A DNA stretch of 64,000 nucleotides, taken from IMG/VR virus record IMGVR_UViG_3300008117_000011, positions 159,672 to 223,671 of that record, one strand, 5' to 3'. Shown here piece by piece: positions 14,101 to 64,000 of the stretch. The notes below the pieces were generated by a model, which had not been told where the DNA came from, searched no databases, and saw only the letters and a program-made list of their open reading frames with translations. Position 1 is the first letter of the stretch. The number at the start of each line of letters is the position of its first letter. The position numbers were made by a program, and so were the translations under genes.

Positions 14101-14115
14101 CTTATTCTATTTTTA

Positions 14116-34182: not shown

Positions 34183-34281
34183 ATAGAAAAATTAACGATT
34201 TTTTATTTTAAATAAATAATATTCAAAACCTAATTCTATATATTTCTACTAATGTTTTACTATTTTTTTCATAACAATTAA

Positions 34282-36414: not shown

Positions 36415-36415
36415 T

Positions 36416-38233
36416 ATGAATTCACAAATATTTAAAGAAACAATCATTTCGGAAATAGAAAAAACAAATTTAACAAATAATAAAATTGGTGATATTTTAA
36501 AATTTATTTACACACAAATAAATGGTGCCTTTTTAGAAATAAAAGGTAATGTTGATAAAAATTTTAATGTTAGTTTTGAGGATGACCAGGGAAATATAGT
36601 TTATCAAACTGAATTAAAAACTGATATGTGGTCAAGACTAAATGCTAAGTATTTTAAAAATTATACAATAAAAATACAAAATGATGATTACTATAATGAA
36701 ATAAAAACCGATTTAAAAGATAAAAGAATTTATATAACTCTTGAGTCTAAATCATTAGGTGATACTTTGGCCTGGGTTCCTTATGTTGATGAATTTAGAA
36801 AAAAACATAGTTGTGATATAGTCCTATCAACATTTATGAATGATTTATTTAAGGAGCAATATCCGGAGATAGAATTTGTAGAACCAGGTACTTCTGTAGA
36901 TAATATATTTGGTATGTTTAATATCGGATGGTTTTATAATCAAAATGACGAAATTGATTACAGTAGACACCCAAATAATTTTAGAACTCAACCATTACAA
37001 AAAACGGCTTCAGATATTTTAGGTCTTGACTATGAAGAAATAAGACCAAAATTAAAACTAAAAGAAAATGTTAAAAAAGAAAAAAAAGTAGGTATTGCAA
37101 TACACGGAACCGCCCAAAGTAAGTATTGGAATAACCCAACTGGTTGGCAAGAGGTTGTTGATTATCTAATTAAACTTGGATATGAAGTTGTTTTATATTC
37201 TGTTGAGCCGGATGGTTATATGGGTAATTTTCATCCTACTGGAATTAAAAATTTCCCAAGAAGTCCATTACAAGAAGTAATTTACGATTTGCAAAGTTGT
37301 GAATTTTTTATTGGTATTGGATCTGGTCTTTCTTGGTTAGCCTGGAGTGTTGGTTTACCAACTATTTTAATATCCGGCTTTAGTGAGGAGTACACCGAAA
37401 CAAAATCAAATACTTATCGTGTTATAAATAATAATGTGTGTACCGGGTGTTTTAATTCCCATAGATTAAATCCTAGTGACTGGAATTGGTGTCCTATTCA
37501 TAAAAACACTGAAAGACAATTTGAATGTAGTAAATCAATAAATTCTAAATTAGTTATTAGTAAAATAAAACAAATTGGTTTTAACTGGGGTTTTTTTGAT
37601 TCAGACCAAAACTTTAAAAAACTAGTTGAGGAAGAATTATTTGTTAATAATATATATGAAAAGTATTTTAATATAAAAGATGGGGATATCGTAATGGATA
37701 TTGGTGCTAGTGTTGGTCCTTTTGTAAAATCATTATGTGATAGAAAATTAAAAAAGGTTTACGCTATTGAACCTAGTAAAACGGAGTTTAATATATTAGA
37801 AGAAAATATTAGTAATAAAAATGTTGTTTTAGTAAATAAAGCAATTGGTAATACAAATCAAACAAATTGTCAACTTGATGAAGTATATGGAGATGATAAG
37901 AGTGTTGACTATATTACTTTTGATAAATTATTAGAAGATTATAAAATTGATAAGATAGATTTTTTAAAATTAGATTGTGAAGGTGGTGAGTATGATATAT
38001 TCACAAATGAAAATTTAAAATTTTTAAAACAAATACCAAAAATAGTTGGTGAGTGGCATTTAAATGACCCAACAAAAAAAGAAAAATTTTTTAAATTTAA
38101 AAATGAAATTTTGTCAAACTTTTCTAAATTTACAATAAATTCAGTTGATGGTTACGATATAACACAAAGACTAAACGATCAAAATTTTATAGAGTATTAT
38201 AGTGAGATTTTAATCTACATTGAAAATAATTAA
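36416..38233 (+). CDS. TibC/Aah-like autotransporter O-heptosyltransferase fused to an FkbM methyltransferase
   Basis: SLGDTLAWVPY, QPLQ, KYWNN..GW, FIGIGSGLSWLAW, LISGFS, four-Cys site CTGC..WCP..FECSKSI; C-terminal DIGASVG, IEP, KLDCEGGE. Confidence 0.85.
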   Translation: MNSQIFKETIISEIEKTNLTNNKIGDILKFIYTQINGAFLEIKGNVDKNFNVSFEDDQGNIVYQTELKTDMWSRLNAKYFKNYTIKIQNDDYYNEIKTDLKDKRIYITLESKSLGDTLAWVPYVDEFRKKHSCDIVLSTFMNDLFKEQYPEIEFVEPGTSVDNIFGMFNIGWFYNQNDEIDYSRHPNNFRTQPLQKTASDILGLDYEEIRPKLKLKENVKKEKKVGIAIHGTAQSKYWNNPTGWQEVVDYLIKLGYEVVLYSVEPDGYMGNFHPTGIKNFPRSPLQEVIYDLQSCEFFIGIGSGLSWLAWSVGLPTILISGFSEEYTETKSNTYRVINNNVCTGCFNSHRLNPSDWNWCPIHKNTERQFECSKSINSKLVISKIKQIGFNWGFFDSDQNFKKLVEEELFVNNIYEKYFNIKDGDIVMDIGASVGPFVKSLCDRKLKKVYAIEPSKTEFNILEENISNKNVVLVNKAIGNTNQTNCQLDEVYGDDKSVDYITFDKLLEDYKIDKIDFLKLDCEGGEYDIFTNENLKFLKQIPKIVGEWHLNDPTKKEKFFKFKNEILSNFSKFTINSVDGYDITQRLNDQNFIEYYSEILIYIENN

Positions 38234-38501: not shown

Positions 38502-41500
38502 TTATCCTACCCAAGTTAACTTAACATAACTGTTCCACCAGAACGTAGTTGGTGCTGCATTTGTAGTATTTTGAGCACCCTGAACGCTTACAGTTACCGT
38601 TGTTACCGGCGCTAGAGTACCTTTTATTGTATAAATACCAGCTCCAGCTGTATTTGTTGCAAATTCTGAACCAGCAAATATAGTTCCTCCGGCGGCAATT
38701 TGATTATTTTCGTATAAACCATTACCAACACTATAATTACTTCCTAGGTCAATTCTACCCCAGGTTCCAGAAACTGTTAGTAATCTTAATCTTGCACCAC
38801 CAGCACCAGCTGTTACCCTACCATATAGTTCAATTTCATATATTGACCCAGCGTTAAGAACAAACGTCATACTAGGTAAATCAACAAATGTGTTATTAGT
38901 GAACGCTAAATCATTAGTTTGTCTAATAAAATCACCATAAAAAACTTTATGTCTAGCATCACTATTTGTTGTATATAGTTGATTACTATTATATTCTATC
39001 GTACCAGCCTCTGGTGTTGTATTTAATGTACCATTAGTAAATTTAAGAGGTGCAGTTCCAGCGGTTGCAGCTCCAGCTCCTAAATGTAGTTTTGCTGTTG
39101 GTGTTCCTTGTGTAATCCCAATAGCATTGGCGGACGCGTCTAAAAAAAACATATTTGTTTGCGTGTCTGACTCAATTCTAAAATCTGAATTAGCATCCCC
39201 CACTTCATTAAATATACTACTACCCTGAGTTGATCTGTATGCAATATTAGTGGTTCCAATAGAGGCTATCGCTTCAAATGCGATATTAGTTGCAGTCCCA
39301 TTAACAGAAGAATCAACCCCAATTGATGTACCACCAACAGAATCTGCGGAAGCTCTAAGACCAAATGTTTGCCCATTGGATGCATTTGATCTTCCGACCA
39401 GTAATCCACTTGATGGTCCTCCCGCCGCAGCAACACTTGATTGGTTAACAATACTATAAGGGTTTGCAAACGTTGTTGTTAAAAGCGAAGCGTTCCCTAT
39501 AAGATCAAGATTAAATGATGGTGTTGTATTTATACCTAGTTGCGTCCCATTAAATATTAAATTTGCTTCGCCTTGTAGTGTATTTGCCGTTCCGGTTGCT
39601 GTTACTACATAGTCATTTACGTTATTGTTTATAATAACACTAGCACCAGATGTCCCAGAAGAACCCCCACTACCTGCAGTACCAGAAGTACCATTAACTC
39701 CAGATGTTCCAGAAGTACCATTAACTCCAGATGTTCCAGAGGATCCACCACTCCCACTAGTACCTCTAGTGCCACTTGTCCCAGAAGAACCTCCACTACC
39801 CGCAGTACCACTCGTTCCATTTATTCCAGAAGTTCCAGAAGTTCCATTAACGCCAGAAGTCCCACTCGTTCCATTTATTCCACTAGTTCCACCACTACCC
39901 GCGGTACCTGATGTACCGTTAATACCAGAGGTTCCACCACTACCAGAAGTCCCTCTAGTACCACTTGTACCACCACTACCTGCGGTACCACTCGTTCCAT
40001 TTATTCCAGAAGTTCCACTCGTTCCATTTATCCCACTAGTACCAGAAGTTCCTGAAGAACCTCCGCTACCTGCAGTACCACTCGTTCCATTTATTCCAGA
40101 AGTTCCATTTATTCCACTTGTACCTCCACTACCAGAAGTACCATTTATTCCACTTGATCCTCCACTGCCAGAAGTTCCAGAGGTACCATTTATACCGGAA
40201 GTACCACTCGTTCCGTTAATACCAGAAGTCCCAGAAGTTCCACTCGTTCCGTTAATACCAGAAGTCCCAGAAGTTCCACCACTACCAGAAGTCCCTCTAG
40301 TACCACTCGTACCACTTGTTCCGTTAACACCAGAAGTTCCATTTGTTCCATTAATGCCAGATGTCCCTGAAGTTCCATTAATACCAGATGTCCCTGAAGA
40401 ACCACCACTACCAGAAGTCCCAGAAGTTCCAGAAGACCCCCCACTACCAGCAGTACCACTCGTTCCATTTATTCCCCCACTACCAGCAGTACCACTCGTT
40501 CCGTTTATTCCAGACGTGCCAGAAGTTCCTGAAGAACCTCCGCTACCGGATGTTCCATTAGTCCCATTTATTCCACTAGTTCCTGAAGTACCCCCACTAC
40601 CAGAAGTTCCACTTGTACCACCACTGCCCGCTGTACCTGATGTGCCATTAATACCAGAAGTTCCTCCGCTACCTGCAGTCCCACTCGTTCCGTTTATTCC
40701 AGACGTGCCAGAAGTTCCTGAAGTTCCTGAAGAACCTCCGCTACCGGATGTTCCATTAGTCCCAGAAGAACCACTTGTTCCGGATGTCCCATCAATTCCA
40801 CTAGTACCAGAAGTTCCGTTAACACCAGAAGTACCACTAGTCCCATCAATTCCACTAGTACCAGAAGTTCCGTTAACACCAGAAGTACCATTGGTTCCGG
40901 AAGACCCTCCACTACCGCTTGTCCCATTAGTTCCAGAAGATCCGCTAGTTCCATCAACACCACTAGTACCAGAGGTTCCATCAACACCACTAGTACCAGA
41001 GGTTCCATCAACACCACTAGTACCAGAAGTTCCGTCAACACCACTAGTACCAGAAGTTCCATTTGTTCCAGAAGTTCCATTAACACCACTAGTTCCAGAA
41101 GTTCCATTAACACCACTAGTTCCAGAAGTTCCATTAACACCACTAGTTCCAGAAGTTCCATCTACCCCACTAGTACCTGATGTACCGTCAATTCCACTGG
41201 TACCAGAAGTTCCGTTAGTACCTGATGTACCGCTAATACCATTGGTACCAGACGTTCCATCAATTCCAGAGGTTCCATTTATACCGCTTGTACCAGAAGA
41301 GCCATCTACGCCACTTGTTCCAGAAGTTCCATCTACCCCACTAGTACCGGAAGTTCCATCTACCCCACTAGTACCGGAAGTTCCATTTGTTCCAGAAGTA
41401 CCCCAGAGGTTCCACTTGTACCAGAAGTACCATCAATACCACTAGTACCAGAAGTTCCATCAATACCACTAGTACCGGATGTTCCGTCAATACCACTAGT

Positions 41501-41869
41501 ACCATCAATTCCAGAGGTCCCAGAGGTTCCGTCAATCCCTGATGTACCAGAAGTGCCGTCTATACCAGAGGTTCCGTCTACCCCACTAGTGCCAGATGTA
41601 CCATCAATACCTGATGTTCCAGAAGTACCATCAACACCAGAAGTACCAGAAGTTCCGTCTATACCAGAGGTCCCAGAGGTGCCTGCGGTTCCAGAAGTTC
41701 CACTTGAACCAAAAGTTGTTGATATATAGTTTGCAACTTGATCTATTGTTGCCTTATATGAAGAACCCCCTGAATATTGTATTGTATCACCGGTATTTAC
41801 GATGTGAATTAATGTATCACCAGTTATATATGGGGCAATTGTTCTATCTGTTAATCTTTGTTGTGACAT
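38502..41869 (-). CDS. Gly-Thr-Ser collagen-like fibre protein (~1121 aa if repaired), frame broken at 41401-41404
   Basis: ORF 41360..41869 leaves the GTS frame at a CCCC run; the other frame continues through the repeat into SGASVIINNNVNDYVVTATG..GEANLIF..FNEVGDANSDFRIESD and ORF 38502..39203; removing 2 nt gives 1122 codons. Confidence 0.8.
39645..41710 (-). repeat. ~2.06 kb coding Gly-X-Y repeat (GTS, GSS, GIN, GVN, GID, GVD, GTA, GTR), about 230 triplets
   Basis: 9 nt periodicity (gttccagaa / gtaccacta variants) with synonymous divergence. Confidence 0.92.
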
Positions 41870-54421: not shown

Positions 54422-54422
54422 T

Positions 54423-54893: not shown

Positions 54894-55180
54894 TGGCAAC
54901 AACAGAAAGATTAGATTTTAGTCAACCAATGAATGATCTTGGTGTTATAGGTGAAGAACAAAGAAAAAGGTTAATACCAAAAAATGACTACAAACCAGTA
55001 AATCAATATTCATCAACAAACAAAGATGCAATATCCGATGGTGATGAGTTTGGTAAAGGTACCGGTACTTTTCTTGATACCGCAAATGGTGGGTCATCAA
55101 CAGACGTGTTTGAGAGAATTAACGAAATTAAAGTTAACGAGTATCAACCAGAAAAACCATACACCACTCCTAGTGCTTAA
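54893..55180 (+). CDS. Hypothetical protein
   Basis: 95 aa, coupled by TAATG on both sides; DGDEFGKGT. Confidence 0.5.
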   Translation: MATTERLDFSQPMNDLGVIGEEQRKRLIPKNDYKPVNQYSSTNKDAISDGDEFGKGTGTFLDTANGGSSTDVFERINEIKVNEYQPEKPYTTPSA

Positions 55181-55560: not shown

Positions 55561-55565
55561 AAAAT

Positions 55566-56162
55566 ATGAATTCTGAAGATCAATTATTGCAAAAATTAGT
55601 TATTGCAAAAAAAATAATGGAAAAACATAATGACATTAATAGAGGGACAGTACAAGAAAGTCCAACTATTAATACACCATCATTACAAGAGTTCCAACCA
55701 GCAAATGGCAACTACAATATCCCTAGTGAATTTTTGGGTGAAGAAGTTAAAATGACACAACAACACACCGAAATCCCAACACAAGACAGAATTATGGGTT
55801 CAAGATTACCTGACGAAATTAAAAGGTTAATGATTGAACACCCAATTGACAAACCAAATAATATGGGTGGAGCAACACTTTCAAACGATTTGGTGGAGAA
55901 AGCGTCAAGACTTATGAATGTTAACGCAAAGGGTGATACTGTTAATGAAAATAAAAAACAAATAACAAGTCACGAAAGACCACAAGGATTATTATCTGCG
56001 GATACCATTAGAGATATTGTAAGAGAAACTGTTGAGGACGTTTTAAAAGAAAATGGTTTACTTGTTGAGTCAACTAGAAAAAGTAACGATATGTTTAAAT
56101 TTAGAGTTGGTAACCACATATTTGAGGGTAAGGTAACAAACGTCAAAAAGATTTCTAAATAA
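55566..56162 (+). CDS. Hypothetical protein
   Basis: 198 aa; SRLPDEIKRLMIEHPI; IRDIVRETVEDVLKE; FRVGNHIFEGKV. Confidence 0.5.
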   Translation: MNSEDQLLQKLVIAKKIMEKHNDINRGTVQESPTINTPSLQEFQPANGNYNIPSEFLGEEVKMTQQHTEIPTQDRIMGSRLPDEIKRLMIEHPIDKPNNMGGATLSNDLVEKASRLMNVNAKGDTVNENKKQITSHERPQGLLSADTIRDIVRETVEDVLKENGLLVESTRKSNDMFKFRVGNHIFEGKVTNVKKISK

Positions 56163-56184
56163 ATTTAATTTATACTTAATGTGT

Positions 56185-56220
56185 AACCCTTTTATCGTTT
56201 GATAAAGGGGTTTTTTATTT
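56185..56220 (+). terminator. Rho-independent terminator
   Basis: aacccttttatc-gttt-gataaaggggtt followed by ttttattt. Confidence 0.75.
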
Positions 56221-56230
56221 TAAAACAGAA

Positions 56231-56259
56231 TTGACTTGTTTCTCAATAAGGGTTATAAT
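56231..56259 (+). promoter_or_regulatory. Sigma70-type promoter of the second glycosyltransferase cluster
   Basis: TTGACT (56231-56236), 17 nt spacer, TATAAT (56254-56259), immediately after a terminator. Confidence 0.8.
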
Positions 56260-56282
56260 TTAATGGTAAATTGTATAAAATT

Positions 56283-57497
56283 ATGAGTAAAATTAGAGTA
56301 TTAGTCATCCCTTCAGATACATCGGGAGTCGGAAAATTCAGATCAGTTGATCCCCACGTTAAACTACAAAATATGTATCCGGATGAATTTCACGTTGATA
56401 TTAACTACCAACCAAATGTAAATGATATAAACTTTTGGAAAAATTATCAGATAGTTCACTTTCATAGAAACATTGGTCAAGACTATGATAGTTGTCCAAA
56501 ATTAATTAAAATGTTACAATCTATGGGTATTGTTGTAATTGGTGATGTTGATGATTACTGGTTACCAACAAAAGAGCACCCAATCCACCAACTAATTGTT
56601 CAAAACAAGTTACACGAAAAAATTGTAAATAATTTAAAAGTTTGTGATTATGTAATAACAACTACCGAAATTTTTGCAAATGAAATTAGAAAGTTTAATA
56701 AAAATGTAATTGTATTCCCAAATGGGGTTGACCCAGAGGACCCACAATTTAATGAACCAACACTTCCTTCAGAAAAAATTAGAGTTGGCTGGCTTGGTGG
56801 TTCATCTCACTTACACGACCTTAAACTTCTTGATGGTATGGTAAGTAAATTATCACCTATACAAGATAAATTACAATATTATGTTTGTGGTTTTGATATC
56901 CGTGGAAGTGTAACTGAAATTAATAAAACTACAGGTGAAAAAACCCAAAGACCAATTAGACCAGATGAAACTGTGTGGGTTAAGTATGAAGAAATTTTTA
57001 CAAACAATTACAAAATCATTACACCAAAATATAAAGAGTATCTTGATACATTTACAGAAAATGATTACTCTGGTGTTATGGATGAGAACTATGTTAGAGT
57101 TTGGACAAGACCTGTTACTAGTTACGCAAAGAATTACTCTAAGTTTGACATATCATTAGCACCAATTAAAAATCACGTATTTAACAGAATGAAATCACAA
57201 CTTAAGGTAATTGAAGCCGGTTTTTATAAAAAGGCATTAATTGCATCAAATGTTGGTCCGTATACTATTGATTTAAAACACGCGATGAAAAATGGTCAGT
57301 TTACTGATGGTAACGCTCTTCTTGTTGATGAAACTAGAAATCATAGTGATTGGGCTAAATCAATTAAGAAACTTGTTGAAAATCCTAATATGGTTGTAGA
57401 TCTTGGTGAAAGACTATATGAAACTGTTAAAGACAAATACAATTTACAAAATATAACTAAATTGCGAAAAGAATTTTACAAATCCCTAATTAAATAA
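56283..57497 (+). CDS. GT-B fold (GT4-like) glycosyltransferase
   Basis: GVGKFRSVDP, DVDD, RVGWLGGSSH..DL, DISLAP..FNRMKSQLKVIEAG, IASNVGPY; ATG at 56283. Confidence 0.8.
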   Translation: MSKIRVLVIPSDTSGVGKFRSVDPHVKLQNMYPDEFHVDINYQPNVNDINFWKNYQIVHFHRNIGQDYDSCPKLIKMLQSMGIVVIGDVDDYWLPTKEHPIHQLIVQNKLHEKIVNNLKVCDYVITTTEIFANEIRKFNKNVIVFPNGVDPEDPQFNEPTLPSEKIRVGWLGGSSHLHDLKLLDGMVSKLSPIQDKLQYYVCGFDIRGSVTEINKTTGEKTQRPIRPDETVWVKYEEIFTNNYKIITPKYKEYLDTFTENDYSGVMDENYVRVWTRPVTSYAKNYSKFDISLAPIKNHVFNRMKSQLKVIEAGFYKKALIASNVGPYTIDLKHAMKNGQFTDGNALLVDETRNHSDWAKSIKKLVENPNMVVDLGERLYETVKDKYNLQNITKLRKEFYKSLIK

Positions 57498-57500
57498 TTT

Positions 57501-58202
57501 ATGATTACCATTCCAATTACTAAAATTTTATTTCTTGACATTGAGACTGTTGGTGGCTGTCCAGACTATGAATCTTGTCAAAGATTTAACCCAGAAATAT
57601 CTGACCAATTTGAAAAATACTTTGATTGGTTTCAAAAAAGATTTCCGGAAGACTTAGGTCTCTCAAAAGATGAGGTATTTGTTAAAAGAGCTGCACTTGT
57701 TCCGGAGTTCGCTAAAATTGTTTGTGTATCAATGGCTTTTGTGTTAGACAATGGAGAAGTAAAAAAACAAACCTTTTCAAGTGAAGACGAAAAAGAATTA
57801 TTAACACAAGTAAGAGCCCTTCTTGATAGATGTCATAAACTTGATTTCTATCTTTGTGGTCATAATTTAAAAAACTTTGACATTCCAATGCTTGCAAAAA
57901 GGATGATTATCAATGGAATTATGCCATCAAAAATCCTTCCATCTTACGATACAAAACCCTGGGAAGTAAAAGCAATTGACACAAAAGAAATCTGGCAGTA
58001 TGGTGCTTATTCATCTGTTGGCTCACTTGACTTAATGTGTTCTTGTCTTGGTATACCAACACCAAAAGATGGTGAGGTTTCAGGTGCTAATGTTCACAAA
58101 TCATATTGGGAAGAAAGAAAAATAAAAGAAATATCTGAATATTGTGAAAAGGATGTTGAGGTATTAGTTGAAGCTATAAAAAAATTAAAGGATTTAAAAT
58201 GA
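57501..58202 (+). CDS. PolB-like 3'-5' exonuclease (RNase H fold)
   Basis: FLDIET, GHNLKNFDIP, YCEKDV. Confidence 0.85.
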   Translation: MITIPITKILFLDIETVGGCPDYESCQRFNPEISDQFEKYFDWFQKRFPEDLGLSKDEVFVKRAALVPEFAKIVCVSMAFVLDNGEVKKQTFSSEDEKELLTQVRALLDRCHKLDFYLCGHNLKNFDIPMLAKRMIINGIMPSKILPSYDTKPWEVKAIDTKEIWQYGAYSSVGSLDLMCSCLGIPTPKDGEVSGANVHKSYWEERKIKEISEYCEKDVEVLVEAIKKLKDLK

Positions 58203-58762
58203 TAAATGGAATAGAAGATTTGTTTGACGATTCAATCACAAACGCAGATTACGAAAAAATGGCTGAAGAATTTGGTTTTGATGTTAGAGAGTTAGCAAAA
58301 GAAATGGATGGATATCAACCAACAATGGGTATTAACTTTTCTTTGAGTAATCAAGATGCTGTTGAACCAAAATATGTTTATCCGACAGACTCTGGATTTG
58401 ATTTGTATTCAACAGAAGAACTATACGTAGGTCCACTTGAAAGGATTTTAGTTCCAACCGGTTTACACGTTGATATTCCAGATGGATATGAAATACAAGT
58501 AAGGTCAAAAAGTGGTTTAGCTTTAAAACAAGGACTTATGGTTTTAAACTCACCCGGTACCGTGGATCAAGGATATACTGGGGAAATCCAGGTTATTATT
58601 TTTAATACAGCAAAAAATGAAGTAACAATTAATAAAGGACAAAAAATTGCTCAAGCCGTAATTTGTCCGGTTGTTTCTGGTAAATGGGTTACATTTAAAA
58701 AGATTGACAACATAGAAGATAAAGATAGGTCTGATAAAGGATTTGGAAGTACTGGTATATGA
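58199..58762 (+). CDS. dut: Trimeric dUTPase
   Basis: SGFDL, RSKSGLA, PGTVDQGYTGEI, IAQ, RSDKGFGSTG. Confidence 0.95.
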   Translation: MINGIEDLFDDSITNADYEKMAEEFGFDVRELAKEMDGYQPTMGINFSLSNQDAVEPKYVYPTDSGFDLYSTEELYVGPLERILVPTGLHVDIPDGYEIQVRSKSGLALKQGLMVLNSPGTVDQGYTGEIQVIIFNTAKNEVTINKGQKIAQAVICPVVSGKWVTFKKIDNIEDKDRSDKGFGSTGI

Positions 58763-60282
58763 TTACAATTGGATATTCTACAAGGAAACATAACCCAGAG
58801 TTAATTGAGTATTTGAAAAAAACTTGTGGTGGTGGTAAAAGGACCGAGGTCATTGAAAAGGTAAACGGTGGTGATAAAAGTTTGGCACAAGTTTACAATG
58901 AGATTTTAAACGAAGCACAAAATGATTTTGTTGTTTTTTGTCACGATGATTTGGAATTTGACACAAAAAACTGGGGTGAGAAGTTAACAAAACTTTTTGA
59001 GCGAAATCCAGAATATGGTATTATCGGAATTGCCGGAACAACGGATTTAATTGATGGTCGTTGGTGGACATTAAAAGAATCAATGACCGGAATTGTGTCT
59101 CACAAACACGAAGGAAAAAAATGGACAAATACATACTCACCGGATCAAGGGAATAAACTAAAAGAAGTTGTTGTTTTAGATGGTTTATATTTTGCTGTTG
59201 ATAAAAGAAAAATTAAAAATGGTTTTGATGAATCATTTAATGGTTTTCACTTTTATGAAATCCCTTTCTGTTTTGAGAATTATTTAAATGGTGTTAAACT
59301 TGGGGTAACAACACAGATACGAGTCACGCATATGTCAATTGGACAAACTAACCAGCAATGGGAAGAAAATAAAATTCAGTTTGAGGAAAAATATAAAGAT
59401 AAATTTCCGGTAAGATTAACAAATAATAAAACCATTGAGGAAAAATTAGTTATTGATTTTTCTAAAATTGGTATTGGTATGACAACATACAATGCTGAAC
59501 ATAGAATTAAACAATCTGCATTTACTGTTCCTAAATGGATTAAAAACTTTGTTATTGTAAATGATGGGACACCTTATGATAATTCTTCATATCCAGAACA
59601 AGCACACATCATCCAACACGAAACAAATCTATGTGTTGGTGCTGCAAAAAATTCGGCAATGCAATATCTTTTGGACCAAGGTTGTGAACATATATTTTTA
59701 ATGGAAGATGATATTTTAATTAAAGACGAAAAAGTTTTTGAGAAATATATTAACCATTCGTTAATATCTGGAATTAAACATTTAAACTTTGCTCTTCACG
59801 GTCCGGCAAACAAGAAAGGGTCCACCGGGTTTAAGACACTTGAGGATAGAAAAGATGTTGATGGTGAACCAAACCCAAGAATGATTATCCCGTATCCTGA
59901 AGGAGTTAAAATTGCGTTATACCCAAATTGTGTTGGGGCGTTCTCCTATTATCACAAATCAGTTCTTGACAAAATTGGTCTTTTTGATCCAATGTTTAAA
60001 AACGCTTGGGAACACGTTGAGCATACTTTTCAAGCAATTAAAAATGGGTTCCATCCTCCATTCTGGTATTTTGCGGATATTGAGAATAGTTGGGAGTACC
60101 TTACGGATATTCCAAATTCAATTCAGGAAAGTACAATAGCAAGAACTCCGGAGTGGAATGATAACTTTATAAAAGGTACTGAGTGGTATAAGAAAAAACA
60201 CGGAATTACACCAACAGAAACACCTTTAGTAAACCAAGAAGTTGTAGTTAACAACATCAAATACTTTTACAATAATAGATAA
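58759..60282 (+). CDS. Two-domain GT-A (GT2-like) glycosyltransferase
   Basis: YN..FCHDD..LDG..FDE..FHFY; second domain IVNDG, AKN, LMEDD, EHVE. Confidence 0.8.
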   Translation: MITIGYSTRKHNPELIEYLKKTCGGGKRTEVIEKVNGGDKSLAQVYNEILNEAQNDFVVFCHDDLEFDTKNWGEKLTKLFERNPEYGIIGIAGTTDLIDGRWWTLKESMTGIVSHKHEGKKWTNTYSPDQGNKLKEVVVLDGLYFAVDKRKIKNGFDESFNGFHFYEIPFCFENYLNGVKLGVTTQIRVTHMSIGQTNQQWEENKIQFEEKYKDKFPVRLTNNKTIEEKLVIDFSKIGIGMTTYNAEHRIKQSAFTVPKWIKNFVIVNDGTPYDNSSYPEQAHIIQHETNLCVGAAKNSAMQYLLDQGCEHIFLMEDDILIKDEKVFEKYINHSLISGIKHLNFALHGPANKKGSTGFKTLEDRKDVDGEPNPRMIIPYPEGVKIALYPNCVGAFSYYHKSVLDKIGLFDPMFKNAWEHVEHTFQAIKNGFHPPFWYFADIENSWEYLTDIPNSIQESTIARTPEWNDNFIKGTEWYKKKHGITPTETPLVNQEVVVNNIKYFYNNR

Positions 60283-60283
60283 T

Positions 60284-61048
60284 ATGATAGATTTTAAAGA
60301 TGTTACTTTCATTATCCCAATAAGATTTGATAGTGAAGACAGAAAAAGAAATTTTAAAATTACAATTGGGTTTTTAGAAAAAACATTTGATACCAACATT
60401 ATTGTGATGGAATCGGATAAAGAATCAAATGAAGAGTTTGTTAAATCTGTTTCTAATAAAGTACTCTACTTATTTGAACAAACTGAAGACACTTTATTTC
60501 ACAGAACTAGAATGTTAAATGTTATGACAAAAATGTCAAAGACAAATATTGTTGTTAATTATGATGTTGATGTTTTGTTTAAACCAGATCAATATATTGC
60601 AGCCCGGTTTGCACTTAATACCGGTATTGATTTTGCATTTCCATATTCCGGAAAATTCTATGACATCCCACCAAAGTATTTTCAGAACGTTGAGTCAAAC
60701 AATTTTGATACAATAAATTTAAATGAATGTACGTTATTTAACCCAAACTCACTTGGTGGTGCAATATTCTTTAATAAAGATGCATACACAAAAATTGGTC
60801 TTGAGAATGAGAATTTTATATCCTGGGGACACGAGGACTGGGAAAGAATTGGAAGAATTGAAAAGATGGGATATGGTATTTATAGGGTTGATGGTGTGTT
60901 ATATCATCTAACACATCATCGGACACATAATAGCTCTGGATCAAACCCAATGTACGCCCACAATGGTAATGAGTATAATAGAATTATGTCAATGAATAAA
61001 GAACAATTAACAGAACATATAAAAACTTGGAATTGGATTAATGATTAG
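60284..61048 (+). CDS. GT2/GT7-like galactosyltransferase
   Basis: YDVD, LGGAIF, ENENFISWGHED, YHLTH. Confidence 0.75.
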   Translation: MIDFKDVTFIIPIRFDSEDRKRNFKITIGFLEKTFDTNIIVMESDKESNEEFVKSVSNKVLYLFEQTEDTLFHRTRMLNVMTKMSKTNIVVNYDVDVLFKPDQYIAARFALNTGIDFAFPYSGKFYDIPPKYFQNVESNNFDTINLNECTLFNPNSLGGAIFFNKDAYTKIGLENENFISWGHEDWERIGRIEKMGYGIYRVDGVLYHLTHHRTHNSSGSNPMYAHNGNEYNRIMSMNKEQLTEHIKTWNWIND

Positions 61049-61808
61049 TGTTAGTTTAGCTGGTGGTCTTGGTAATTATATGTTTCAGATTGCTGCAGCG
61101 TATTCGTTAGCAATTAATAACAATGACAAATTAATACTTGACGAACAAAGAAGTGTTACCGTCCACAAAGGGATTTCTAACTACAAAAATAATATTTTTA
61201 GAAATCTTGAGTTTGACCAGGTAATTTATAATGGTCTTTACCAAGAACCATATTTTCATTATAAAGAAATTAATTATCGCCCAAATATCTTATTATCCGG
61301 GTATTTCCAAAGTGAAAAATATTTTTTTAAAAATAGAAATGAGATATTAAATTTATTTTCTATTGATGAGTTGAGTGAAAAAATAATAAAGGAAAAATAT
61401 AAAGACGTTAATTTTGAAAATAGTTGCTCACTACACGTAAGAAGGGGTGACTACTTAAAGTATCCTGGAATTCATCCTACTTGTGATTTAAAATATTATC
61501 AAAATTCTATTGACATTATAGACTCTGAAAATATATTAATTTTTTCAGATGATCTTGATTGGTGTAAGGAAAATTTAACCTTTGAAAATAAAAATCTGGT
61601 TTTTATTGATGGTAATCAAGATTACATAGATTTATACTTAATGTCTTTATGTAAAAATAATATAATTGCAAACTCAACATTTTCTTGGTGGGGAGCTTGG
61701 TTAAACAATAATGAAAATAAAAAAGTTTTTGCACCTAAAGTTTGGTTTGGGACAAATACTAACCATAATACAGAGGATTTAATACCAGAAAGATGGGAAA
61801 GAATATAA
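61041..61808 (+). CDS. GT11 alpha-1,2-fucosyltransferase
   Basis: GGLGNYMFQ, GYFQSEKYF, HVRRGDY, FSDD, NSTFSWWGAWL. Confidence 0.9.
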   Translation: MISVSLAGGLGNYMFQIAAAYSLAINNNDKLILDEQRSVTVHKGISNYKNNIFRNLEFDQVIYNGLYQEPYFHYKEINYRPNILLSGYFQSEKYFFKNRNEILNLFSIDELSEKIIKEKYKDVNFENSCSLHVRRGDYLKYPGIHPTCDLKYYQNSIDIIDSENILIFSDDLDWCKENLTFENKNLVFIDGNQDYIDLYLMSLCKNNIIANSTFSWWGAWLNNNENKKVFAPKVWFGTNTNHNTEDLIPERWERI

Positions 61809-62545
61809 AAGTAATAACACTTGGGACACTCCATAACGAGCTTTTTTTTGATAAAAAAGTTTCAATATCTTTTGATACAATAGCAAATACTTTAGACGCT
61901 GATTTAAATGTTCTAGTGCAGATTGAGCCACCATCAATTATGAATACAACACAAGCAATAATAAACAACCAAAATAAATTTAATGTAATTTTTACTTGGA
62001 ATAAGGATATACTTAATAAGTGTTCAAATAGCGTTTTATTCCCATTTGGTTCCTGCTGGATTAAGAATGAAGATCGGAAAATACACGAAAAAACAAAAGA
62101 AACTTCAATCATAGCATCAGTTAAACGTAAAACAATTGGACATAACTTAAGACACAACATTATACAAAGTAATCTTATTGAATTAGATTTATTTGGTAAT
62201 GGTTATAACCCAATTGAAAATAAAATTACAGCGCTTAAAGATTATAGATTTTCACTTATTATTGAAAATGAAAAAATGGATAACTGGTTTACAGAAAAAA
62301 TTATTGATTGTTTAGTTACTGGTACAATACCAATTTACTGGGGATGTCCAAACATAGGTGACTATTTTGATACTAGGGGTTTTATAATTATAGAATCTAT
62401 TGAAGATTTGGCAACTAAGAAAAATATGTTAAATGATGCAACATATTTTGAGATGTTACCATATATTAAAACTAATTTTGAGTTAGCAAAAAATTATACT
62501 GATTTTTGGTCAAGACTTGAGGGAAAAATAAAACTTTTAATATAG
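61793..62545 (+). CDS. GT10 alpha-1,3/4-fucosyltransferase-like protein
   Basis: YRFSLIIEN, WFTEKIIDC, GTIPIYWG. Confidence 0.85.
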   Translation: MGKNIKVITLGTLHNELFFDKKVSISFDTIANTLDADLNVLVQIEPPSIMNTTQAIINNQNKFNVIFTWNKDILNKCSNSVLFPFGSCWIKNEDRKIHEKTKETSIIASVKRKTIGHNLRHNIIQSNLIELDLFGNGYNPIENKITALKDYRFSLIIENEKMDNWFTEKIIDCLVTGTIPIYWGCPNIGDYFDTRGFIIIESIEDLATKKNMLNDATYFEMLPYIKTNFELAKNYTDFWSRLEGKIKLLI

Positions 62546-62642
62546 ATTAAATATGAATTTATCTGACGACACTGTTCCTATTAAGTAGGAAGACCACTTA
62601 AAAGATTGTATAAAAAAGGTTTAAAATTTAATATTAAAGTAT

Positions 62643-63335
62643 ATGAAGTTTTCAATAGTAATACCAACCTGGGAACAATATGGGTACGGTGTAAAATTCT
62701 TAAAACAACTATTAACATCTATTGGTACACAAACATATAATGATTTTGAAATTATAATTTCAGATCATAGTATAAATTCTGAAATTAGGGACTTGTGTTT
62801 ATTGTTTAAAGATTTAAATATTATCTACGTTAGAAACGAAAAAAATAGAGGTAATAGTCCGGCTAATTTGAATAATGGGTTAAAGCTAGCTAATGGTGAA
62901 ATTATAAAGATAATGTTTCAGGATGATTTTTTTATTAACAATGATTCTCTAAATTTAATTTATAATTTTTTTAACGAGAATTCTTGTAATTGGTTGGTCA
63001 ATGGTTGTTGCCACACGAAAGATGGTATTAACTATGAAAGATATATGATACCATCTTGGAATGATGAAATATTATACGGTGTCAATACAATAAGTTCACC
63101 ATCTGTGTTGTCATTTATTAATGATGATATCTTATTTTTTGACGAGAACCTAACAATGTTAATGGATTGTGATTATTACTATTCTCTTTATGCGCGATAT
63201 GGTTTACCTTGTGTATTACCAGATTATCTTATTACAAATAGAATGCATAAACACCAAATAAGTAGTCTATATAATAAAAACTTAAATGACGAAATAAACT
63301 TAGTTAAAAATAAAAATTATGAATTTAGAAAATGA
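62643..63335 (+). CDS. GT2 glycosyltransferase
   Basis: FSIVIPT, EIIISD, NLNNG, MFQDD, SPS, DCD. Confidence 0.85.
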   Translation: MKFSIVIPTWEQYGYGVKFLKQLLTSIGTQTYNDFEIIISDHSINSEIRDLCLLFKDLNIIYVRNEKNRGNSPANLNNGLKLANGEIIKIMFQDDFFINNDSLNLIYNFFNENSCNWLVNGCCHTKDGINYERYMIPSWNDEILYGVNTISSPSVLSFINDDILFFDENLTMLMDCDYYYSLYARYGLPCVLPDYLITNRMHKHQISSLYNKNLNDEINLVKNKNYEFRK

Positions 63336-63957
63336 TGGAGAAAGAATGGACATTAATTATTATAATATGAATTATAATAATTTTAACATATACCAAAAGT
63401 CACATTATAAAAGATACGAGATGGCTAAAACACAAGTCAAAGAAAATTATGTTGTTGGTGATATGGCATGTGGTTCCGGATACGGAAGTTTAATGTTATC
63501 AGAAATAAGTAAGGAGGTTTATGGTGTTGACATTGATCAAATAACAATTGACGAAATAACAAAAAGATATGAAAATGAAAAAAAAGTAAAATTTTATAAA
63601 AATAATTTACTTGATATTGATTTTGAAAATAAATTTGATTTAATTGTCTCTTTTGAGACTGTTGAACATTTTGATGAACCTGATATTGAAAGGTTAATGT
63701 TTAATTTTCATAAAGCTTTAAAGTCTGGCGGGACGATAATCTTCTCAACACCCTATAATCAACCTAAAACACCAGCTTCAATGAAGTGGCATAGAACTTT
63801 TTATATTGTTGAGGATAAGATGAATGAACTACTAAATGGTTATTTTGAAATTGAGAAGATTTGGTACCAAGATTATCAAACTCACTACTTAAAAGAAAAT
63901 ATTGATACTAAAGATTTTATTATCTGTAAAGCAAAAAAATTAGATAAAAATGGATAA
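63319..63957 (+). CDS. Class I SAM-dependent methyltransferase
   Basis: HYKRY, DMACGSGYG, GVDID, FDLIVSFETVEH, STP. Confidence 0.88.
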   Translation: MNLENDGERMDINYYNMNYNNFNIYQKSHYKRYEMAKTQVKENYVVGDMACGSGYGSLMLSEISKEVYGVDIDQITIDEITKRYENEKKVKFYKNNLLDIDFENKFDLIVSFETVEHFDEPDIERLMFNFHKALKSGGTIIFSTPYNQPKTPASMKWHRTFYIVEDKMNELLNGYFEIEKIWYQDYQTHYLKENIDTKDFIICKAKKLDKNG

Positions 63958-64000
63958 TACGGTTAATTTTAATCTCCAAACTATATGTGACGGACATCAT
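63950..64000 (+). CDS. Start of an ORF truncated by the window edge
   Basis: ATG at 63950 overlaps the previous gene end; MDNTVNFNLQTICDGH. Confidence 0.4.
   Translation, partial: MDNTVNFNLQTICDGHH

What the first reader, a model, noticed from the sequence alone, without database searches (positions are those of the whole stretch)
58759..63957. GT7-like, GT11 and GT10 in tandem: an enzyme set able to build H/Lewis-type fucosylated glycans
Seen: consecutive, closely spaced or overlapping genes for a galactosyltransferase-like enzyme and alpha-1,2- and alpha-1,3/4-fucosyltransferase families, flanked by GT2 genes and a methyltransferase. Established: GT11 plus GT10 on a Gal-GlcNAc core gives Lewis y/b in Helicobacter, and the Skp1 glycan started by GT60 is extended with Gal then alpha-1,2-Fuc. 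Inference: these extend GT60-primed virion glycans, or remodel the host surface for superinfection exclusion. Family membership does not fix the donor sugar.
Basis: partly seen in the sequence, partly recalled or inferred. Interest (0 to 1): 0.62.

Follow-up and report, generated by a model that had tools for sequence, protein, structure and literature searches.

The report
Phage fucose/colitose glycan gene island
An uncultured freshwater jumbo phage carries a real, conserved row of sugar-adding enzymes, followed just past the window's end by its own GDP-colitose/fucose supply genes. It can probably build a Lewis-blood-group-like glycan, but such gene sets are already known in large phages and what the glycan is attached to is still unknown.

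Summary
Window 58759-63957 encodes, head to tail on the + strand: a two-domain GT-A enzyme, a GT7-like GT-A, a GT11, a compact GT10, a GT2 and a class I methyltransferase. Catalytic motifs are intact, and dN/dS against a relative is 0.08-0.18 for the first four genes.

The carrier is a tailed jumbo phage from lakes (tail sheath, tail fibres), not a eukaryotic giant virus. The window is the last 64 kb of a 223,671-base contig. Three other contigs of the same phage (99.98-99.99% identical) continue past its end with a CmcI-type sugar O-methyltransferase, an Fcl/ColC-like reductase, a ColD-type 3-dehydratase and Gmd. This is the GDP-colitose (3-deoxy-fucose) route, so the GT11 and GT10 donor may be colitose rather than fucose, or as well as it.

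In relatives, the GT4-like to GT7-like block and Gmd-PhoH are conserved flanks. Between them GT11, GT10, GT2, methyl- and acyltransferases and ColD vary like a serotype cassette.

All the enzymes are predicted soluble, and no lipid-carrier priming or export genes were found. The acceptor is not shown: virion proteins are favoured, with host envelope and DNA as rivals.

GT60 is present in the window, but three more distant relatives keep the block without it. Cyanophages carry comparable sets, so this is a new member of a known kind.

The parts
56185..56259 (+). Terminator-like hairpin (56185-56212) followed by a sigma-70-like promoter match (56231-56259, TTGACT-17-TATAAT). This is a possible start of the transcription unit that holds the island.
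   Evidence: These are consensus matches only. Promoter-like sites in the region were not clearly above the shuffled expectation (67 found, 52 +/- 8 expected).
56271..57497 (+). GT-B glycosyltransferase (GT4/GT1-like, 408 aa). It is the first gene of the conserved left flank.
   Evidence: Weak Pfam hits to Glyco_trans_1_4, Glyco_transf_4 and Glycos_transf_1, all below the cut-offs. 47-85% identical and syntenic in relatives. dN/dS 0.09.
57501..58762 (+). Two non-glycan genes embedded in the island: a PolB-exonuclease-like 3'-5' exonuclease (57501-58202) and dUTPase (58199-58762).
   Evidence: PF10108 at 8.7e-15 and PF00692 at 1.8e-26. Dut equivalog at 1.8e-42, above its cut-off. Same position in relatives.
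58759..60282 (+). Two-domain GT-A glycosyltransferase (507 aa): an N-terminal Glyco_tranf_2_5 domain plus a second GT2-like half with an EDD motif.
   Evidence: 68-85% identical in relatives, the best conserved gene of the island. dN/dS 0.08. No TM segment.
60284..61048 (+). GT7-like GT-A glycosyltransferase (254 aa). It is the last gene of the conserved left flank and the candidate enzyme that lays the Gal/GalNAc-type core.
   Evidence: PF02709 at 1.9e-8. Beta4GalT7 and beta4GalT1 are the best solved sequence relatives. AF2 model pLDDT 87.8. Foldseek top hits are beta4GalT1 and K4 chondroitin polymerase. D94, D96, W181, G182, E184 and D185 are invariant.
61041..61808 (+). GT11 family enzyme (255 aa), alpha-1,2-fucosyl/colitosyltransferase type. 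It overlaps the previous gene by 8 nt.
   Evidence: PF01531 at 1.4e-31 and 2.5e-33 in six-frame search. H132, R134, R135 and D137 and the NSTFSWWGAWL block are invariant across 13 phage homologues. dN/dS 0.18.
61793..62545 (+). Compact GT10 family enzyme (250 aa), alpha-1,3/4-fucosyltransferase type. It overlaps GT11 by 16 nt.
   Evidence: PF00852 at 4.2e-9. H. pylori FucT 2nzw at 3e-10, with N159, E168 and K169 aligned to N240, E249 and K250. AF2 pLDDT 94.9. All top Foldseek hits are GT10 fucosyltransferases. K100, R120, E158, N159, E168 and K169 are invariant, and E45 nearly so.
62643..63335 (+). GT2 glycosyltransferase (230 aa) in the variable part of the island.
   Evidence: PF00535 at 2.1e-13. 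Best NCBIfam resemblance is PglI, far below its cut-off. Only 42% identical in L006, where the flanks are about 84%.
63319..63957 (+). Class I SAM-dependent methyltransferase (212 aa), a probable sugar O-methyltransferase. Part of the variable section.
   Evidence: PF13649 at 3.5e-17. Present in L021 at 71% and absent from L006.
63950..64000 (+). First 17 codons of a CmcI/rhamnosyl-O-methyltransferase-type gene, cut by the contig end. In contigs of the same phage it is followed by the Fcl/ColC-like reductase, the ColD-type 3-dehydratase, Gmd and PhoH.
   Evidence: L004 is 99.99% identical to window 53793-64000. Downstream genes in L004: 10158-10772 PF04989 at 3.7e-31; 10774-11688 Fcl model at 2.6e-59; 11669-12820 ColD 2gms at 2.2e-56; 12813-13805 gmd TIGR01472 at 1.3e-122. 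Contigs in runs X1, X3 and X12 bridge the end.
31304..38233 (.). Second glycosylation island. It holds an HtrL_YibB-domain protein (31304-32938, minus strand), GT60 (32935-34182, minus strand), a GT1 + Methyltransf_24 fusion (34282-36414, +) and a GT9 + FkbM methyltransferase fusion (36416-38233, +).
   Evidence: GT60 has 44-49% identical full-length homologues in the cultured jumbo phages Xoo-sp13, XacN1, CM1 and RAS14.
38505..41869 (-). Collagen-like fibre gene with long (Gly-Thr-Ser)-type triplet repeats, read in two frames that change near 41432-41363. It is a candidate O-glycosylation substrate lying between the two islands (inference only).
   Evidence: The neighbours are a virion structural protein (42217-45174) and a tail fibre protein (45202-48153).

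Best explanation
The region is the window's share of a phage-borne glycan-building island.

The sugar supply lies just past the contig end. Gmd makes GDP-4-keto-6-deoxymannose from host GDP-mannose. A ColD-type PMP-dependent 3-dehydratase and an Fcl/ColC-type epimerase-reductase then convert it to GDP-L-colitose (3-deoxy-L-fucose), and possibly also to GDP-L-fucose.

The conserved enzymes (GT4-like, the two-domain GT-A and the GT7-like enzyme) would lay a hexose/HexNAc core. GT11 would add the 6-deoxy or 3,6-dideoxy sugar in alpha-1,2 linkage to a galactose-type residue. The compact GT10 would add a second one in alpha-1,3/4 linkage to a HexNAc-type residue. The result would be a Lewis b/y-like determinant or its colitose analogue. 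A further GT2 and two O-methyltransferases would extend and cap it.

All the enzymes are soluble, so assembly is cytoplasmic. The acceptor I favour is the phage's own virion proteins, such as the collagen-like Gly-Thr-Ser fibre and other tail-fibre or capsid proteins. This would resemble mycobacteriophage and giant-virus virion glycosylation.

Shown: gene families, intact motifs, folds, the neighbouring sugar-nucleotide genes, synteny, the cassette-like variation and purifying selection.
Inferred: donor identity, linkages, order of action and, above all, the acceptor.
For: Families, motifs and folds:
- Family assignments and motifs.
- The GT10 model has pLDDT 94.9, and its best structural matches are all alpha-1,3-fucosyltransferases. 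N159, E168 and K169 align to N240, E249 and K250 of the H. pylori enzyme.
- The GT7-like model matches beta4GalT1 and chondroitin polymerase.

Sugar supply:
- Gmd (1.3e-122), the Fcl/ColC-like reductase (2.6e-59 to the Fcl model; human GFUS 3.3e-53) and the DegT-family protein are contiguous with the island in the same phage.
- The DegT-family protein matches ColD 2gms at 2.2e-56, against 4e-24 for perosamine synthase. It has His where aminotransferases have the Schiff-base Lys.
- The reductase falls in a well-supported clade (SH-aLRT 100) that always sits next to ColD. ColD-less relatives carry a reductase only 37-39% identical.
- A GT11 enzyme that uses GDP-colitose and also accepts GDP-fucose is known: WbgN of E. 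coli O55 (PMC12723683).
- Bacterial loci pair the same short GT10 type with Gmd-ColD-ColC (L040, L043) or with GT11-GT2-MT (L035).

Selection: dN/dS is 0.08-0.18.

Cytoplasmic assembly and a protein acceptor:
- No TM segment was found in any GT or MT, and there is no polytopic Wzx/Wzy-like ORF.
- No Bac_transf or WecA-type primer was found in the 223 kb.
- GT60 belongs to a family I know only as protein-O-GlcNAc transferases (from memory). It lies in the same window beside fibre genes.
Against: - No assay or glycan data exist, and the host is unknown.
- GT60 was not found in three more distant relatives that keep the block. Their contigs are 64-77% complete.
- The island is on the strand and in the run of genes that holds an exonuclease, dUTPase and PhoH. 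It is not among the structural genes, which are on the opposite strand. That layout suits an early or host-directed function at least as well.
- Soluble GTs are also normal for O-unit assembly on host Und-PP-GlcNAc, so the lack of TM segments does not discriminate between acceptors.
- The contig is only 76% complete.
- Across all loci, the link between reductase clade and ColD presence is not significant (74 of 500 shuffles as low).
- The GT-A fold of the GT7-like enzyme also matches a GT-A fucosyltransferase, WrtF, so its donor is open.
Confidence: 0.45

Rival explanations
1. Host-envelope remodelling. The soluble phage enzymes act at the inner face of the host membrane on host lipid-linked intermediates such as Und-PP-GlcNAc. 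The host's own flippase, polymerase and ligase then export the altered O-antigen or capsule. This would change the infected cell's surface, for example to block superinfection or to alter recognition by grazers.
For: - This is the function usually assumed for the comparable cyanophage gene sets (PMC9602691; PMC12801897).
- GT11, GT10, GT2 and the colitose genes have their nearest cellular relatives in bacterial polysaccharide-type loci.
- Cassette-like turnover between conserved flanks is what tracking of variable host O-antigens would produce.
- The island sits with early-type genes (dUTPase, exonuclease, PhoH) rather than with structural genes.
Against: - No Gtr-type, Wzx, Wzy, WaaL or priming transferase was found in the 223 kb.
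- Seven or more GT domains plus a dedicated sugar-nucleotide route is far more than known seroconverting phages use (my knowledge).
- Replacing surface LPS during a lytic cycle is slow (inference).
- No integrase or lysogeny evidence was looked for or seen.
Confidence: 0.3
2. DNA hypermodification. The glycosyltransferases build an oligosaccharide on a modified base of the phage genome to evade restriction, as in T-even phages and the 5hmC-glycan gene clusters found in phage metaviromes.
For: - Phage GTs related to LPS enzymes can put mono- to trisaccharides on 5hmC (bioRxiv 10.1101/2023.12.21.572611).
- The island includes dUTPase and an exonuclease.
- The genome has four C5-cytosine methyltransferase genes.
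Against: - The thymidylate synthase homologue scores as a normal ThyA (325 bits, 2 bits under the 327-bit equivalog cut-off), and Dut is canonical.
- No Tet/JBP dioxygenase was found, although that search had no positive control.
- No GT11, GT10 or GDP-deoxyhexose chemistry is known on DNA (my knowledge).
- The size and tailoring of the set (methylation, and acylation in relatives) look like a surface glycan.
Confidence: 0.07
3. The GT11 and GT10 enzymes use ordinary GDP-L-fucose, made by Gmd plus the Fcl-like reductase. The glycan is then a true H/Lewis-type fucoside, and ColD serves another product or is inactive.
For: - The reductase's best model is GDP-L-fucose synthase across its full length, and human GFUS is its best solved relative.
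- Relatives without ColD keep GT11 and GT10 together with Gmd and Fcl.
- WbgN shows that GT11 enzymes can take either donor.
Against: - ColD-type genes with the diagnostic His are retained at 81% identity in the nearest relative.
- The reductase scores far below the Fcl equivalog cut-off (201 against 500 bits).
- It belongs to the clade that always travels with ColD.
Confidence: 0.3

Closest known systems
Cell-wall/LPS-type gene sets of T4-like cyanophages (S-SCSM1, S-SCSM2R, P-SSM2, ACG-2014f)
   Same: - Large tailed phages carrying many soluble GTs together with GDP-sugar genes.
- S-SCSM1 has Gmd, GDP-fucose synthase and an alpha-1,2-FucT (PMC9602691).
- S-SCSM2R has 13 GTs, including GT10 and two GT11 (PMC12801897).
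- ACG-2014f has Gmd, an SDR, a ColD-like protein (His-His) and GT11 in a row, with a GT6 further on.
- The GT7-like protein has 35-39% identical full-length homologues there.
   Different: - This is an unrelated phage lineage. Its PolB is only about 23% identical to that of any cultured phage.
- It comes from fresh water.
- GT7-like, GT11 and GT10 are directly tandem, and the island has conserved flanks around a swappable centre.
- The ColD-type gene is annotated only as hypothetical in ACG-2014f. I found no paper linking colitose to cyanophages.
- Function has not been tested in any of them.
GDP-colitose pathway and O-antigen assembly of E. coli O55 (Gmd/ColB, ColD, ColC, WbgN)
   Same: - Gmd, a ColD-type 3-dehydratase with His in place of the Schiff-base Lys, and an Fcl-like epimerase-reductase lie next to a GT11 enzyme.
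- WbgN is an alpha-1,2-colitosyltransferase acting on Gal-beta-1,3-GlcNAc that also tolerates GDP-fucose.
   Different: - Sequence identity to ColD is moderate (2.2e-56, roughly 40%).
- No ManB/ManC, Wzx, Wzy or priming enzyme is present here.
- A GT10 and methyltransferases are added.
- The carrier is a phage.
- From memory, not verified here: Vibrio cholerae O139 carries a di-colitosylated Gal-GlcNAc that resembles Lewis b.
Helicobacter pylori Lewis-antigen synthesis (FutA/FutB of GT10, FutC of GT11)
   Same: - The same two fucosyltransferase families are present.
- The GT10 nucleotide-binding motif is nearly identical (TEKIID...TIPIYWG), with the E/N/E/K residues in register.
- The structural match is best to the H. 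pylori enzyme and FUT9.
   Different: - The phage GT10 is 250 aa, with a much shorter N-terminal acceptor domain and no C-terminal heptad or amphipathic tail.
- From memory, the Gal transferase in H. pylori is GT25; here it is GT7-like.
- The donor here may be colitose.
Virion glycosylation of mycobacteriophages and of giant viruses (chloroviruses, mimiviruses)
   Same: Virus-encoded soluble GTs, and in giant viruses sugar-nucleotide enzymes as well, glycosylate capsid, tail or fibre proteins in the cytoplasm. This is cited in PMC12619734 and is otherwise from my knowledge.
   Different: - Mycobacteriophages use one or two GTs placed next to the capsid gene.
- Nothing here shows that virions are glycosylated.
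Skp1 hydroxyproline glycosylation in Dictyostelium (GT60 Gnt1, then Gal, then alpha-1,2-Fuc)
   Same: A GT60 enzyme is present in the same genome, and the Gal-then-alpha-1,2-deoxyhexose logic could be parallel.
   Different: - From my knowledge, the Skp1 fucosyltransferase is GT74, not GT11.
- No Skp1 or prolyl hydroxylase was sought or seen.
- GT60 is 22 kb away on the other strand and is not co-conserved with the block.

Membership tests
CAZy GT11 (alpha-1,2-fucosyl/colitosyltransferases) | Match to the family profile above its curated threshold | tested here: met
   PF01531 at 110.3 bits against a 23.9 cut-off, covering profile positions 34-280 of 298; 112 bits in six-frame search.
CAZy GT11 (alpha-1,2-fucosyl/colitosyltransferases) | Conserved HxRRxD motif and the C-terminal NSTFSWW block shared by alpha-2/alpha-6/protein-O-fucosyltransferases | tested here: met
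   HVRRGDY at residues 132-138 and NSTFSWWGAWL at 211-221. H132, R134, R135, D137, N211, S212, F214, W216 and W217 are invariant across 13 homologues.
CAZy GT11 (alpha-1,2-fucosyl/colitosyltransferases) | Transfers L-fucose (or colitose) from a GDP-sugar in alpha-1,2 linkage to galactose | not testable with these tools
   No solved relative was found by sequence. A GDP-deoxyhexose supply next door is circumstantial support only.
CAZy GT10 (alpha-1,3/4-fucosyltransferases) | Match to the family profile and the alpha-1,3-FucT motif (FxLxFENS....YxTEK) | tested here: met
   PF00852 at 36.8 bits against a 23.9 cut-off. The motif is FSLIIENEKMDNWFTEK, with E158, N159, E168 and K169 invariant across 20 homologues. 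2nzw at 3e-10.
CAZy GT10 (alpha-1,3/4-fucosyltransferases) | Two-domain GT-B fold resembling solved GT10 enzymes, with an N-domain catalytic Glu | tested here: met
   AF2 pLDDT 94.9. Foldseek ranks 1-11 are H. pylori FucT, FUT9, mango FT13 and Arabidopsis FUT11, with TM by query 0.51-0.62. E45 in an 'EP' motif is nearly invariant; equating it with the catalytic Glu is an inference. The N-domain is much shorter than in the solved enzymes.
CAZy GT10 (alpha-1,3/4-fucosyltransferases) | GDP-fucose donor and alpha-1,3/4 linkage to GlcNAc | not testable with these tools
   Needs enzyme assays.
CAZy GT7 (beta-1,4-Gal/GalNAc transferases, chondroitin synthase domain) | GT-A fold with a DxD motif and the WG(x)ED acid pair of the 7C domain | tested here: met
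   PF02709 at 34.3 bits against a 23 cut-off. DVD at residues 94-96 and WGHED at 181-185, invariant in 12 homologues. Best Foldseek hits are beta4GalT1 (7.5e-10) and K4 chondroitin polymerase (TM 0.62).
CAZy GT7 (beta-1,4-Gal/GalNAc transferases, chondroitin synthase domain) | Clear separation from GT2 and other GT-A families, with UDP-Gal/GalNAc as donor | tested here: inconclusive
   Glyco_tranf_2_2 scores nearly as well (30.6 bits). Sequence matches to solved GT7 enzymes are weak (best 0.0018). SpsA and the GT-A fucosyltransferase WrtF score similarly by fold. 'GT7-like' is the fair name.
CAZy GT60 (polypeptide O-alpha-GlcNAc transferases) | Match to the family profile | tested here: met
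   PF11397 at 201 bits against a 21 cut-off for window 32935-34182 on the minus strand.
CAZy GT60 (polypeptide O-alpha-GlcNAc transferases) | Acts upstream of the GT7-like/GT11/GT10 block (co-inheritance expected) | tested here: not met
   GT60 is present in the close relative G004. It was not found in G001-G003, which keep the block; their contigs are 64-77% complete, so absence is not proven.
GDP-L-colitose pathway (Gmd, ColD, ColC) | ColD-type PMP-dependent 3-dehydratase: closest to ColD, with His replacing the aminotransferase Lys | tested here: met
   ColD 2gms at 2.2e-56, against perosamine synthase at 4e-24. FGHH aligns with the SHH of ColD, and the H188N mutant entry marks the position. 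The His is kept in all phage homologues.
GDP-L-colitose pathway (Gmd, ColD, ColC) | Gmd and an Fcl-family epimerase-reductase adjacent to ColD | tested here: met
   TIGR01472 at 409 bits, 6 bits under its 415 cut-off (1.3e-122). Fcl model at 201 bits across the full length. The gene order is reductase, ColD, Gmd in L004.
GDP-L-colitose pathway (Gmd, ColD, ColC) | The product is GDP-colitose | not testable with these tools
   Needs in vitro reconstitution.
Wzx/Wzy-type O-antigen or capsule locus | Priming phosphoglycosyltransferase, flippase and polymerase encoded with the GTs | tested here: not met
   No Bac_transf or Glycos_transf_4 match was found. No polytopic ORF was found in 223 kb or in the 6.5 kb downstream. 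The genome is 76% complete.
Phage DNA-glycan hypermodification cluster (C5-MT + 5mYOX/TET or hydroxymethylase + GT) | An enzyme that makes a hydroxymethyl-pyrimidine next to the GTs | tested here: inconclusive
   ThyA scores as a normal thymidylate synthase. Four C5-MTs are present but lie 50-115 kb away. The Tet_JBP search found nothing, but its control was silent.

The most novel reading that the evidence does not exclude
A widespread lineage of freshwater jumbo phages carries a swappable 'glycan serotype' cassette between conserved flanks. With it each strain would decorate its own virion fibres or capsid with a different methylated Lewis-like glycan built from phage-made GDP-colitose or GDP-fucose. 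That would be the first phage-made colitose glycan, and a phage counterpart of bacterial O-antigen diversity acting in host recognition or camouflage.
Probability: 0.2. Interest if true: 0.75.

Novelty: new member of a known kind. Interest (0 to 1): 0.45.

Why it matters
Large phages of lakes and oceans often carry many glycosyltransferases, and for none of them is the product or the target known.

This locus offers a compact, testable case. It pairs a complete donor pathway (Gmd, ColD, reductase) with a short, ordered row of small soluble enzymes whose families predict specific linkages. Natural variants, with and without ColD and with different methyl- and acyltransferases, could be compared.

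If the enzymes work as predicted they would also be new, small alpha-1,2 and alpha-1,3/4 colitosyl/fucosyltransferases for glycan synthesis.

If the target proves to be the virion, it would extend virion glycosylation from mycobacteriophages to aquatic jumbo phages.

Tried and rejected
- Giant-virus reading. Rejected: the window has a tail sheath, tail fibre and phage structural genes.
- Near relatives among 50,697 phage records. Only short, distant DNA hits were found, and PolB is about 23% identical at best.
- Identity with the 'moraphage' lineage of large aquatic phages (PMC12619734). Not supported by the one marker tried, since no HSP70 is in the contig. Not pursued further.
- gmd/fcl inside the 223 kb contig. 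Absent. They were found only by following identical contigs past the end.
- Solved relatives by sequence. None for GT11 or GT60. The two-domain GT matched only an uncharacterised ORF.
- Test of whether ColD-linked reductases form one clade. The local clade is well supported, but label clustering over the whole tree is not significant.
- Tet/JBP search. Uninformative because the control was silent.
- Literature. No paper joins colitose with cyanophages, and the hits for 'colitose' + 'phage genome' concerned host O-antigens. The WbgN primary paper (PMC4813730) is not held. The Lewis-b likeness of V. cholerae O139 could not be sourced and is marked as memory.
- Promoter and terminator scan. The counts are close to the shuffled expectation.
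- RNA evidence. No RNA run holds the stretch.
- Not attempted: comparison with WbgN itself, because no sequence was to hand; it would not settle donor choice in any case.
Only genetic code 11 was used.

Full report
**What is there**

Window 58759-63957 holds six + strand ORFs with abutting or overlapping ends. Pfam places them as follows:
- 58759-60282: Glyco_tranf_2_5/GT2. A second GT-A-like half shows an EDD motif and a weak rhamnosyltransferase hit.
- 60284-61048: Glyco_transf_7C at 1.9e-8, with Glyco_tranf_2_2 nearly as good.
- 61041-61808: Glyco_transf_11 at 1.4e-31.
- 61793-62545: Glyco_transf_10 C-terminal domain at 4.2e-9.
- 62643-63335: Glycos_transf_2.
- 63319-63957: class I methyltransferase.

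All scores are above the curated cut-offs.

**Are the genes functional and correctly named?**

- GT11. The protein has HVRRGDY, FSDDLDWC and NSTFSWWGAWL. These residues are invariant across 13 phage homologues.
- GT10. The protein is only 250 aa but carries FSLIIENEKMDNWFTEKIIDCLVTGTIPIYWG.
  - Against H. pylori alpha-1,3-FucT (2nzw, 3e-10), N159, E168 and K169 fall on N240, E249 and K250.
  - K100, R120, E158, N159, E168 and K169 are invariant, and E45 (in an 'EP' motif) nearly so, across 20 homologues.
  - The AlphaFold model is confident (pLDDT 94.9). Its best PDB matches are exclusively GT10 fucosyltransferases: H. pylori FucT, FUT9, mango FT13 and Arabidopsis FUT11.
  - It is a compact GT10 with a shortened acceptor domain.
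- GT7-like. The protein keeps FHRTRMLNV, DVD and WGHED, which mirror the FNRA.LLNV, DVD and WGGEDD of beta4GalT.
  - Its model (pLDDT 87.8) matches beta4GalT1 and the K4 chondroitin polymerase first. SpsA and the GT-A fucosyltransferase WrtF follow closely.
  - 'GT7-like GT-A' is the fair description, and its donor is open.
- Selection. Against the relative L006, dN/dS is 0.08 (two-domain GT), 0.11 (GT7-like), 0.18 (GT11) and 0.16 (GT10). dS is near saturation.

**What carries it**

The window is the last 64 kb of an IMG/VR contig of 223,671 bases, estimated 76% complete. It encodes:
- an 1111-aa tail sheath, family B polymerase and an SNF2 helicase;
- a tail fibre protein and a virion structural protein.

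This is a tailed jumbo phage, not a virus of eukaryotes. No cultured phage is close: PolB is about 23% identical at best. The stretch occurs in freshwater and lake metagenomes from at least 15 studies, and no RNA run holds it.

**Beyond the window's end**

Three other IMG/VR contigs from different samples are 99.98-99.99% identical to window 53793-64000 and run on past it. The window's last 51 bases are the start of the next gene. In L004 the continuation is:

| L004 coordinates | Gene | Evidence |
|---|---|---|
| 10158-10772 | CmcI/rhamnosyl-O-methyltransferase type | PF04989, 3.7e-31 |
| 10774-11688 | Fcl-family epimerase-reductase | GDP-fucose synthase model 2.6e-59 over full length; human GFUS 3.3e-53 |
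| 11669-12820 | DegT-family protein | see below |
| 12813-13805 | Gmd | TIGR01472, 1.3e-122 |
| 13845-14582 | PhoH | |
| 14551-15472 | two unknown ORFs | |
| 15479-16540 | weak GT1 | |

Contigs in runs X1, X3 and X12 bridge the window's end without mismatch or with two.

**The twist: colitose**

The DegT-family protein is far closer to ColD, the GDP-4-keto-6-deoxymannose 3-dehydratase of E. coli O55, than to perosamine synthase (2gms at 2.2e-56 against 4e-24). At the position of ColD His188 it has His, not the Schiff-base Lys of aminotransferases. The H188N mutant entry marks the column. All phage homologues keep this His.

Gmd + ColD + an Fcl-like reductase (ColC) is the GDP-L-colitose route (established biochemistry, from my knowledge).

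The reductase belongs to a well-supported clade (SH-aLRT 100) whose members all sit beside ColD. One of them, L014, is cut inside ColD by the locus end. Relatives lacking ColD carry a reductase only 37-39% identical. Over the whole tree the association is not significant (74 of 500 shuffles).

A GT11 enzyme that naturally uses GDP-colitose yet tolerates GDP-fucose is known: WbgN, which acts on Gal-beta-1,3-GlcNAc (PMC12723683). The donor for the phage GT11 and GT10 may therefore be colitose, fucose or both.

**Architecture across relatives**

Searches with the GT10 and GT7-like proteins gave 30 viral loci, analysed.
- Conserved left flank: GT4-like, exonuclease, dUTPase, two-domain GT and GT7-like are syntenic. 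The two-domain GT and GT7-like are 61-85% identical throughout. GT4-like, exonuclease and dUTPase fall to 37-53% in the more distant relatives.
- Conserved right flank: Gmd, PhoH, two small ORFs and GT1.
- Variable centre: GT11 (45-64%) and GT10 (31-76%) vary, and GT2 is replaced in some relatives. The class I and CmcI methyltransferases are present or absent. TylF- and FkbM-type methyltransferases, hexapeptide acyltransferases, extra SDRs and DegT fragments appear.
- ColD is present in some relatives (ours, L006/L022, L012, L013, L014). Others have only Gmd + Fcl (L024, L025, L026, L030, L032).

This is the pattern of a serotype-like cassette.

Bacterial relatives of the short GT10 (31-47% identity) are common, especially in Rhodobacteraceae. 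Some sit with GT11-GT2-MT (Margulisbacteria, L035) or with Gmd-ColD-ColC (Gammaproteobacteria MAGs L040 and L043).

**Where does the glycan go?**

Nothing here shows it. The facts that bear on it:
- No GT or MT of either island has a TM segment. No polytopic Wzx/Wzy-like ORF and no Bac_transf or WecA-type primer is present in the 223 kb.
- A second island at 31304-38233 holds an HtrL-domain protein, a true GT60 (2.4e-60), a GT1+MT fusion and a GT9+FkbM fusion. It abuts a collagen-like (Gly-Thr-Ser)n fibre gene at 38505-41869 and the tail-fibre genes.
- GT60 has 44-49% identical homologues in the cultured jumbo phages Xoo-sp13, XacN1, CM1 and RAS14.
- GT60 is present in a close relative. It was not found in three more distant ones that keep the block.
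- The island lies with an exonuclease, dUTPase and PhoH on the strand opposite the structural genes. A terminator-like hairpin and a promoter-like site precede it.
- ThyA and Dut look canonical. Four C5-cytosine methyltransferases exist elsewhere in the genome. No Tet/JBP was found, but that search lacked a positive control.

I weigh virion-protein glycosylation at about 0.4, host-envelope remodelling at about 0.3, DNA modification at under 0.1, and the rest as unknown.

**Comparison with what is known**

T4-like cyanophages already show such sets:
- S-SCSM1 has Gmd, GDP-fucose synthase and an alpha-1,2-FucT (PMC9602691).
- S-SCSM2R has 13 GTs, including GT10 and GT11 (PMC12801897).
- ACG-2014f has Gmd, an SDR, a ColD-like protein with the same His-His, and GT11, with a GT6 further on. 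Its ColD-like gene is annotated only as hypothetical.

The finding is therefore a new member of a known kind. The new points are:
- the recognition of a phage-borne colitose route, on which I found no paper;
- the tight GT7-like/GT11/GT10 tandem;
- the conserved-flank, variable-centre layout in an uncultured freshwater jumbo-phage lineage.

**Verdict**

- Observation: confirmed.
- Interpretation: partly supported. The families are right, gmd/fcl were found and GT60 is present. The likely donor shifts towards colitose, the eukaryotic framing is wrong, the link to GT60 is weak and the target is untested.
- Interest: 0.45.

Noticed in passing
window 38505-41869 (minus strand): A long collagen-like gene of Gly-Thr-Ser/Gly-Ile-Asp triplets, which raises GC to about 45%. 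It starts at 41869 in one frame and continues to 38505 in another, with the frame change near 41432-41363. This could be a real frameshift, an assembly error in repeats, or two genes. The 606-aa + strand ORF at 39625-41445 (PEVPLVP repeats) is its antisense shadow.
   Followed up: partly
window 31304-38233: A second glycosylation island: an HtrL_YibB-domain protein, GT60, and two fusion proteins that join a glycosyltransferase to a methyltransferase (GT1 + Methyltransf_24; GT9 + FkbM).
   Followed up: partly
window 21138-23219 (+): A 693-aa protein with a complete Fe/Mn superoxide dismutase (residues about 164-352) embedded in otherwise unmatched sequence. This is an unusual fusion for a phage.
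   Followed up: no
window 14116-17451 (minus strand): The tail sheath protein is 1111 aa. Only its last 300 residues or so match the sheath domains, so the first 800 or so are a large unexplained extension.
   Followed up: no
G000:C1:106213-108760 and 153342-154277 (outside the window): Four C5-cytosine DNA methyltransferase genes, three of them in a row. One appears split into two matches.
   Followed up: no
L114 676-2310 (G000:C1:66270-67904): The thymidylate synthase gene lies next to a group I intron-type (GIY-YIG) homing endonuclease ORF, as with the td intron of T4. Whether thyA is interrupted was not checked.
   Followed up: no
window 63950-64000 and L004 10158 onward: The contig ends 50 bases into the next gene, inside the variable cassette. 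In four lake runs, 62-96% of the contigs that matched the island run on into unlike sequence. This suggests co-occurring strains with different cassettes break the assembly here.
   Followed up: partly
L115 (Synechococcus phage ACG-2014f, KJ019148.1 153102-158512): A published cyanophage has Gmd, an SDR, a ColD-like protein (FGHH motif, annotated hypothetical), GT11 and, further on, a GT6. This is a possible unrecognised colitose/blood-group-like set.
   Followed up: partly
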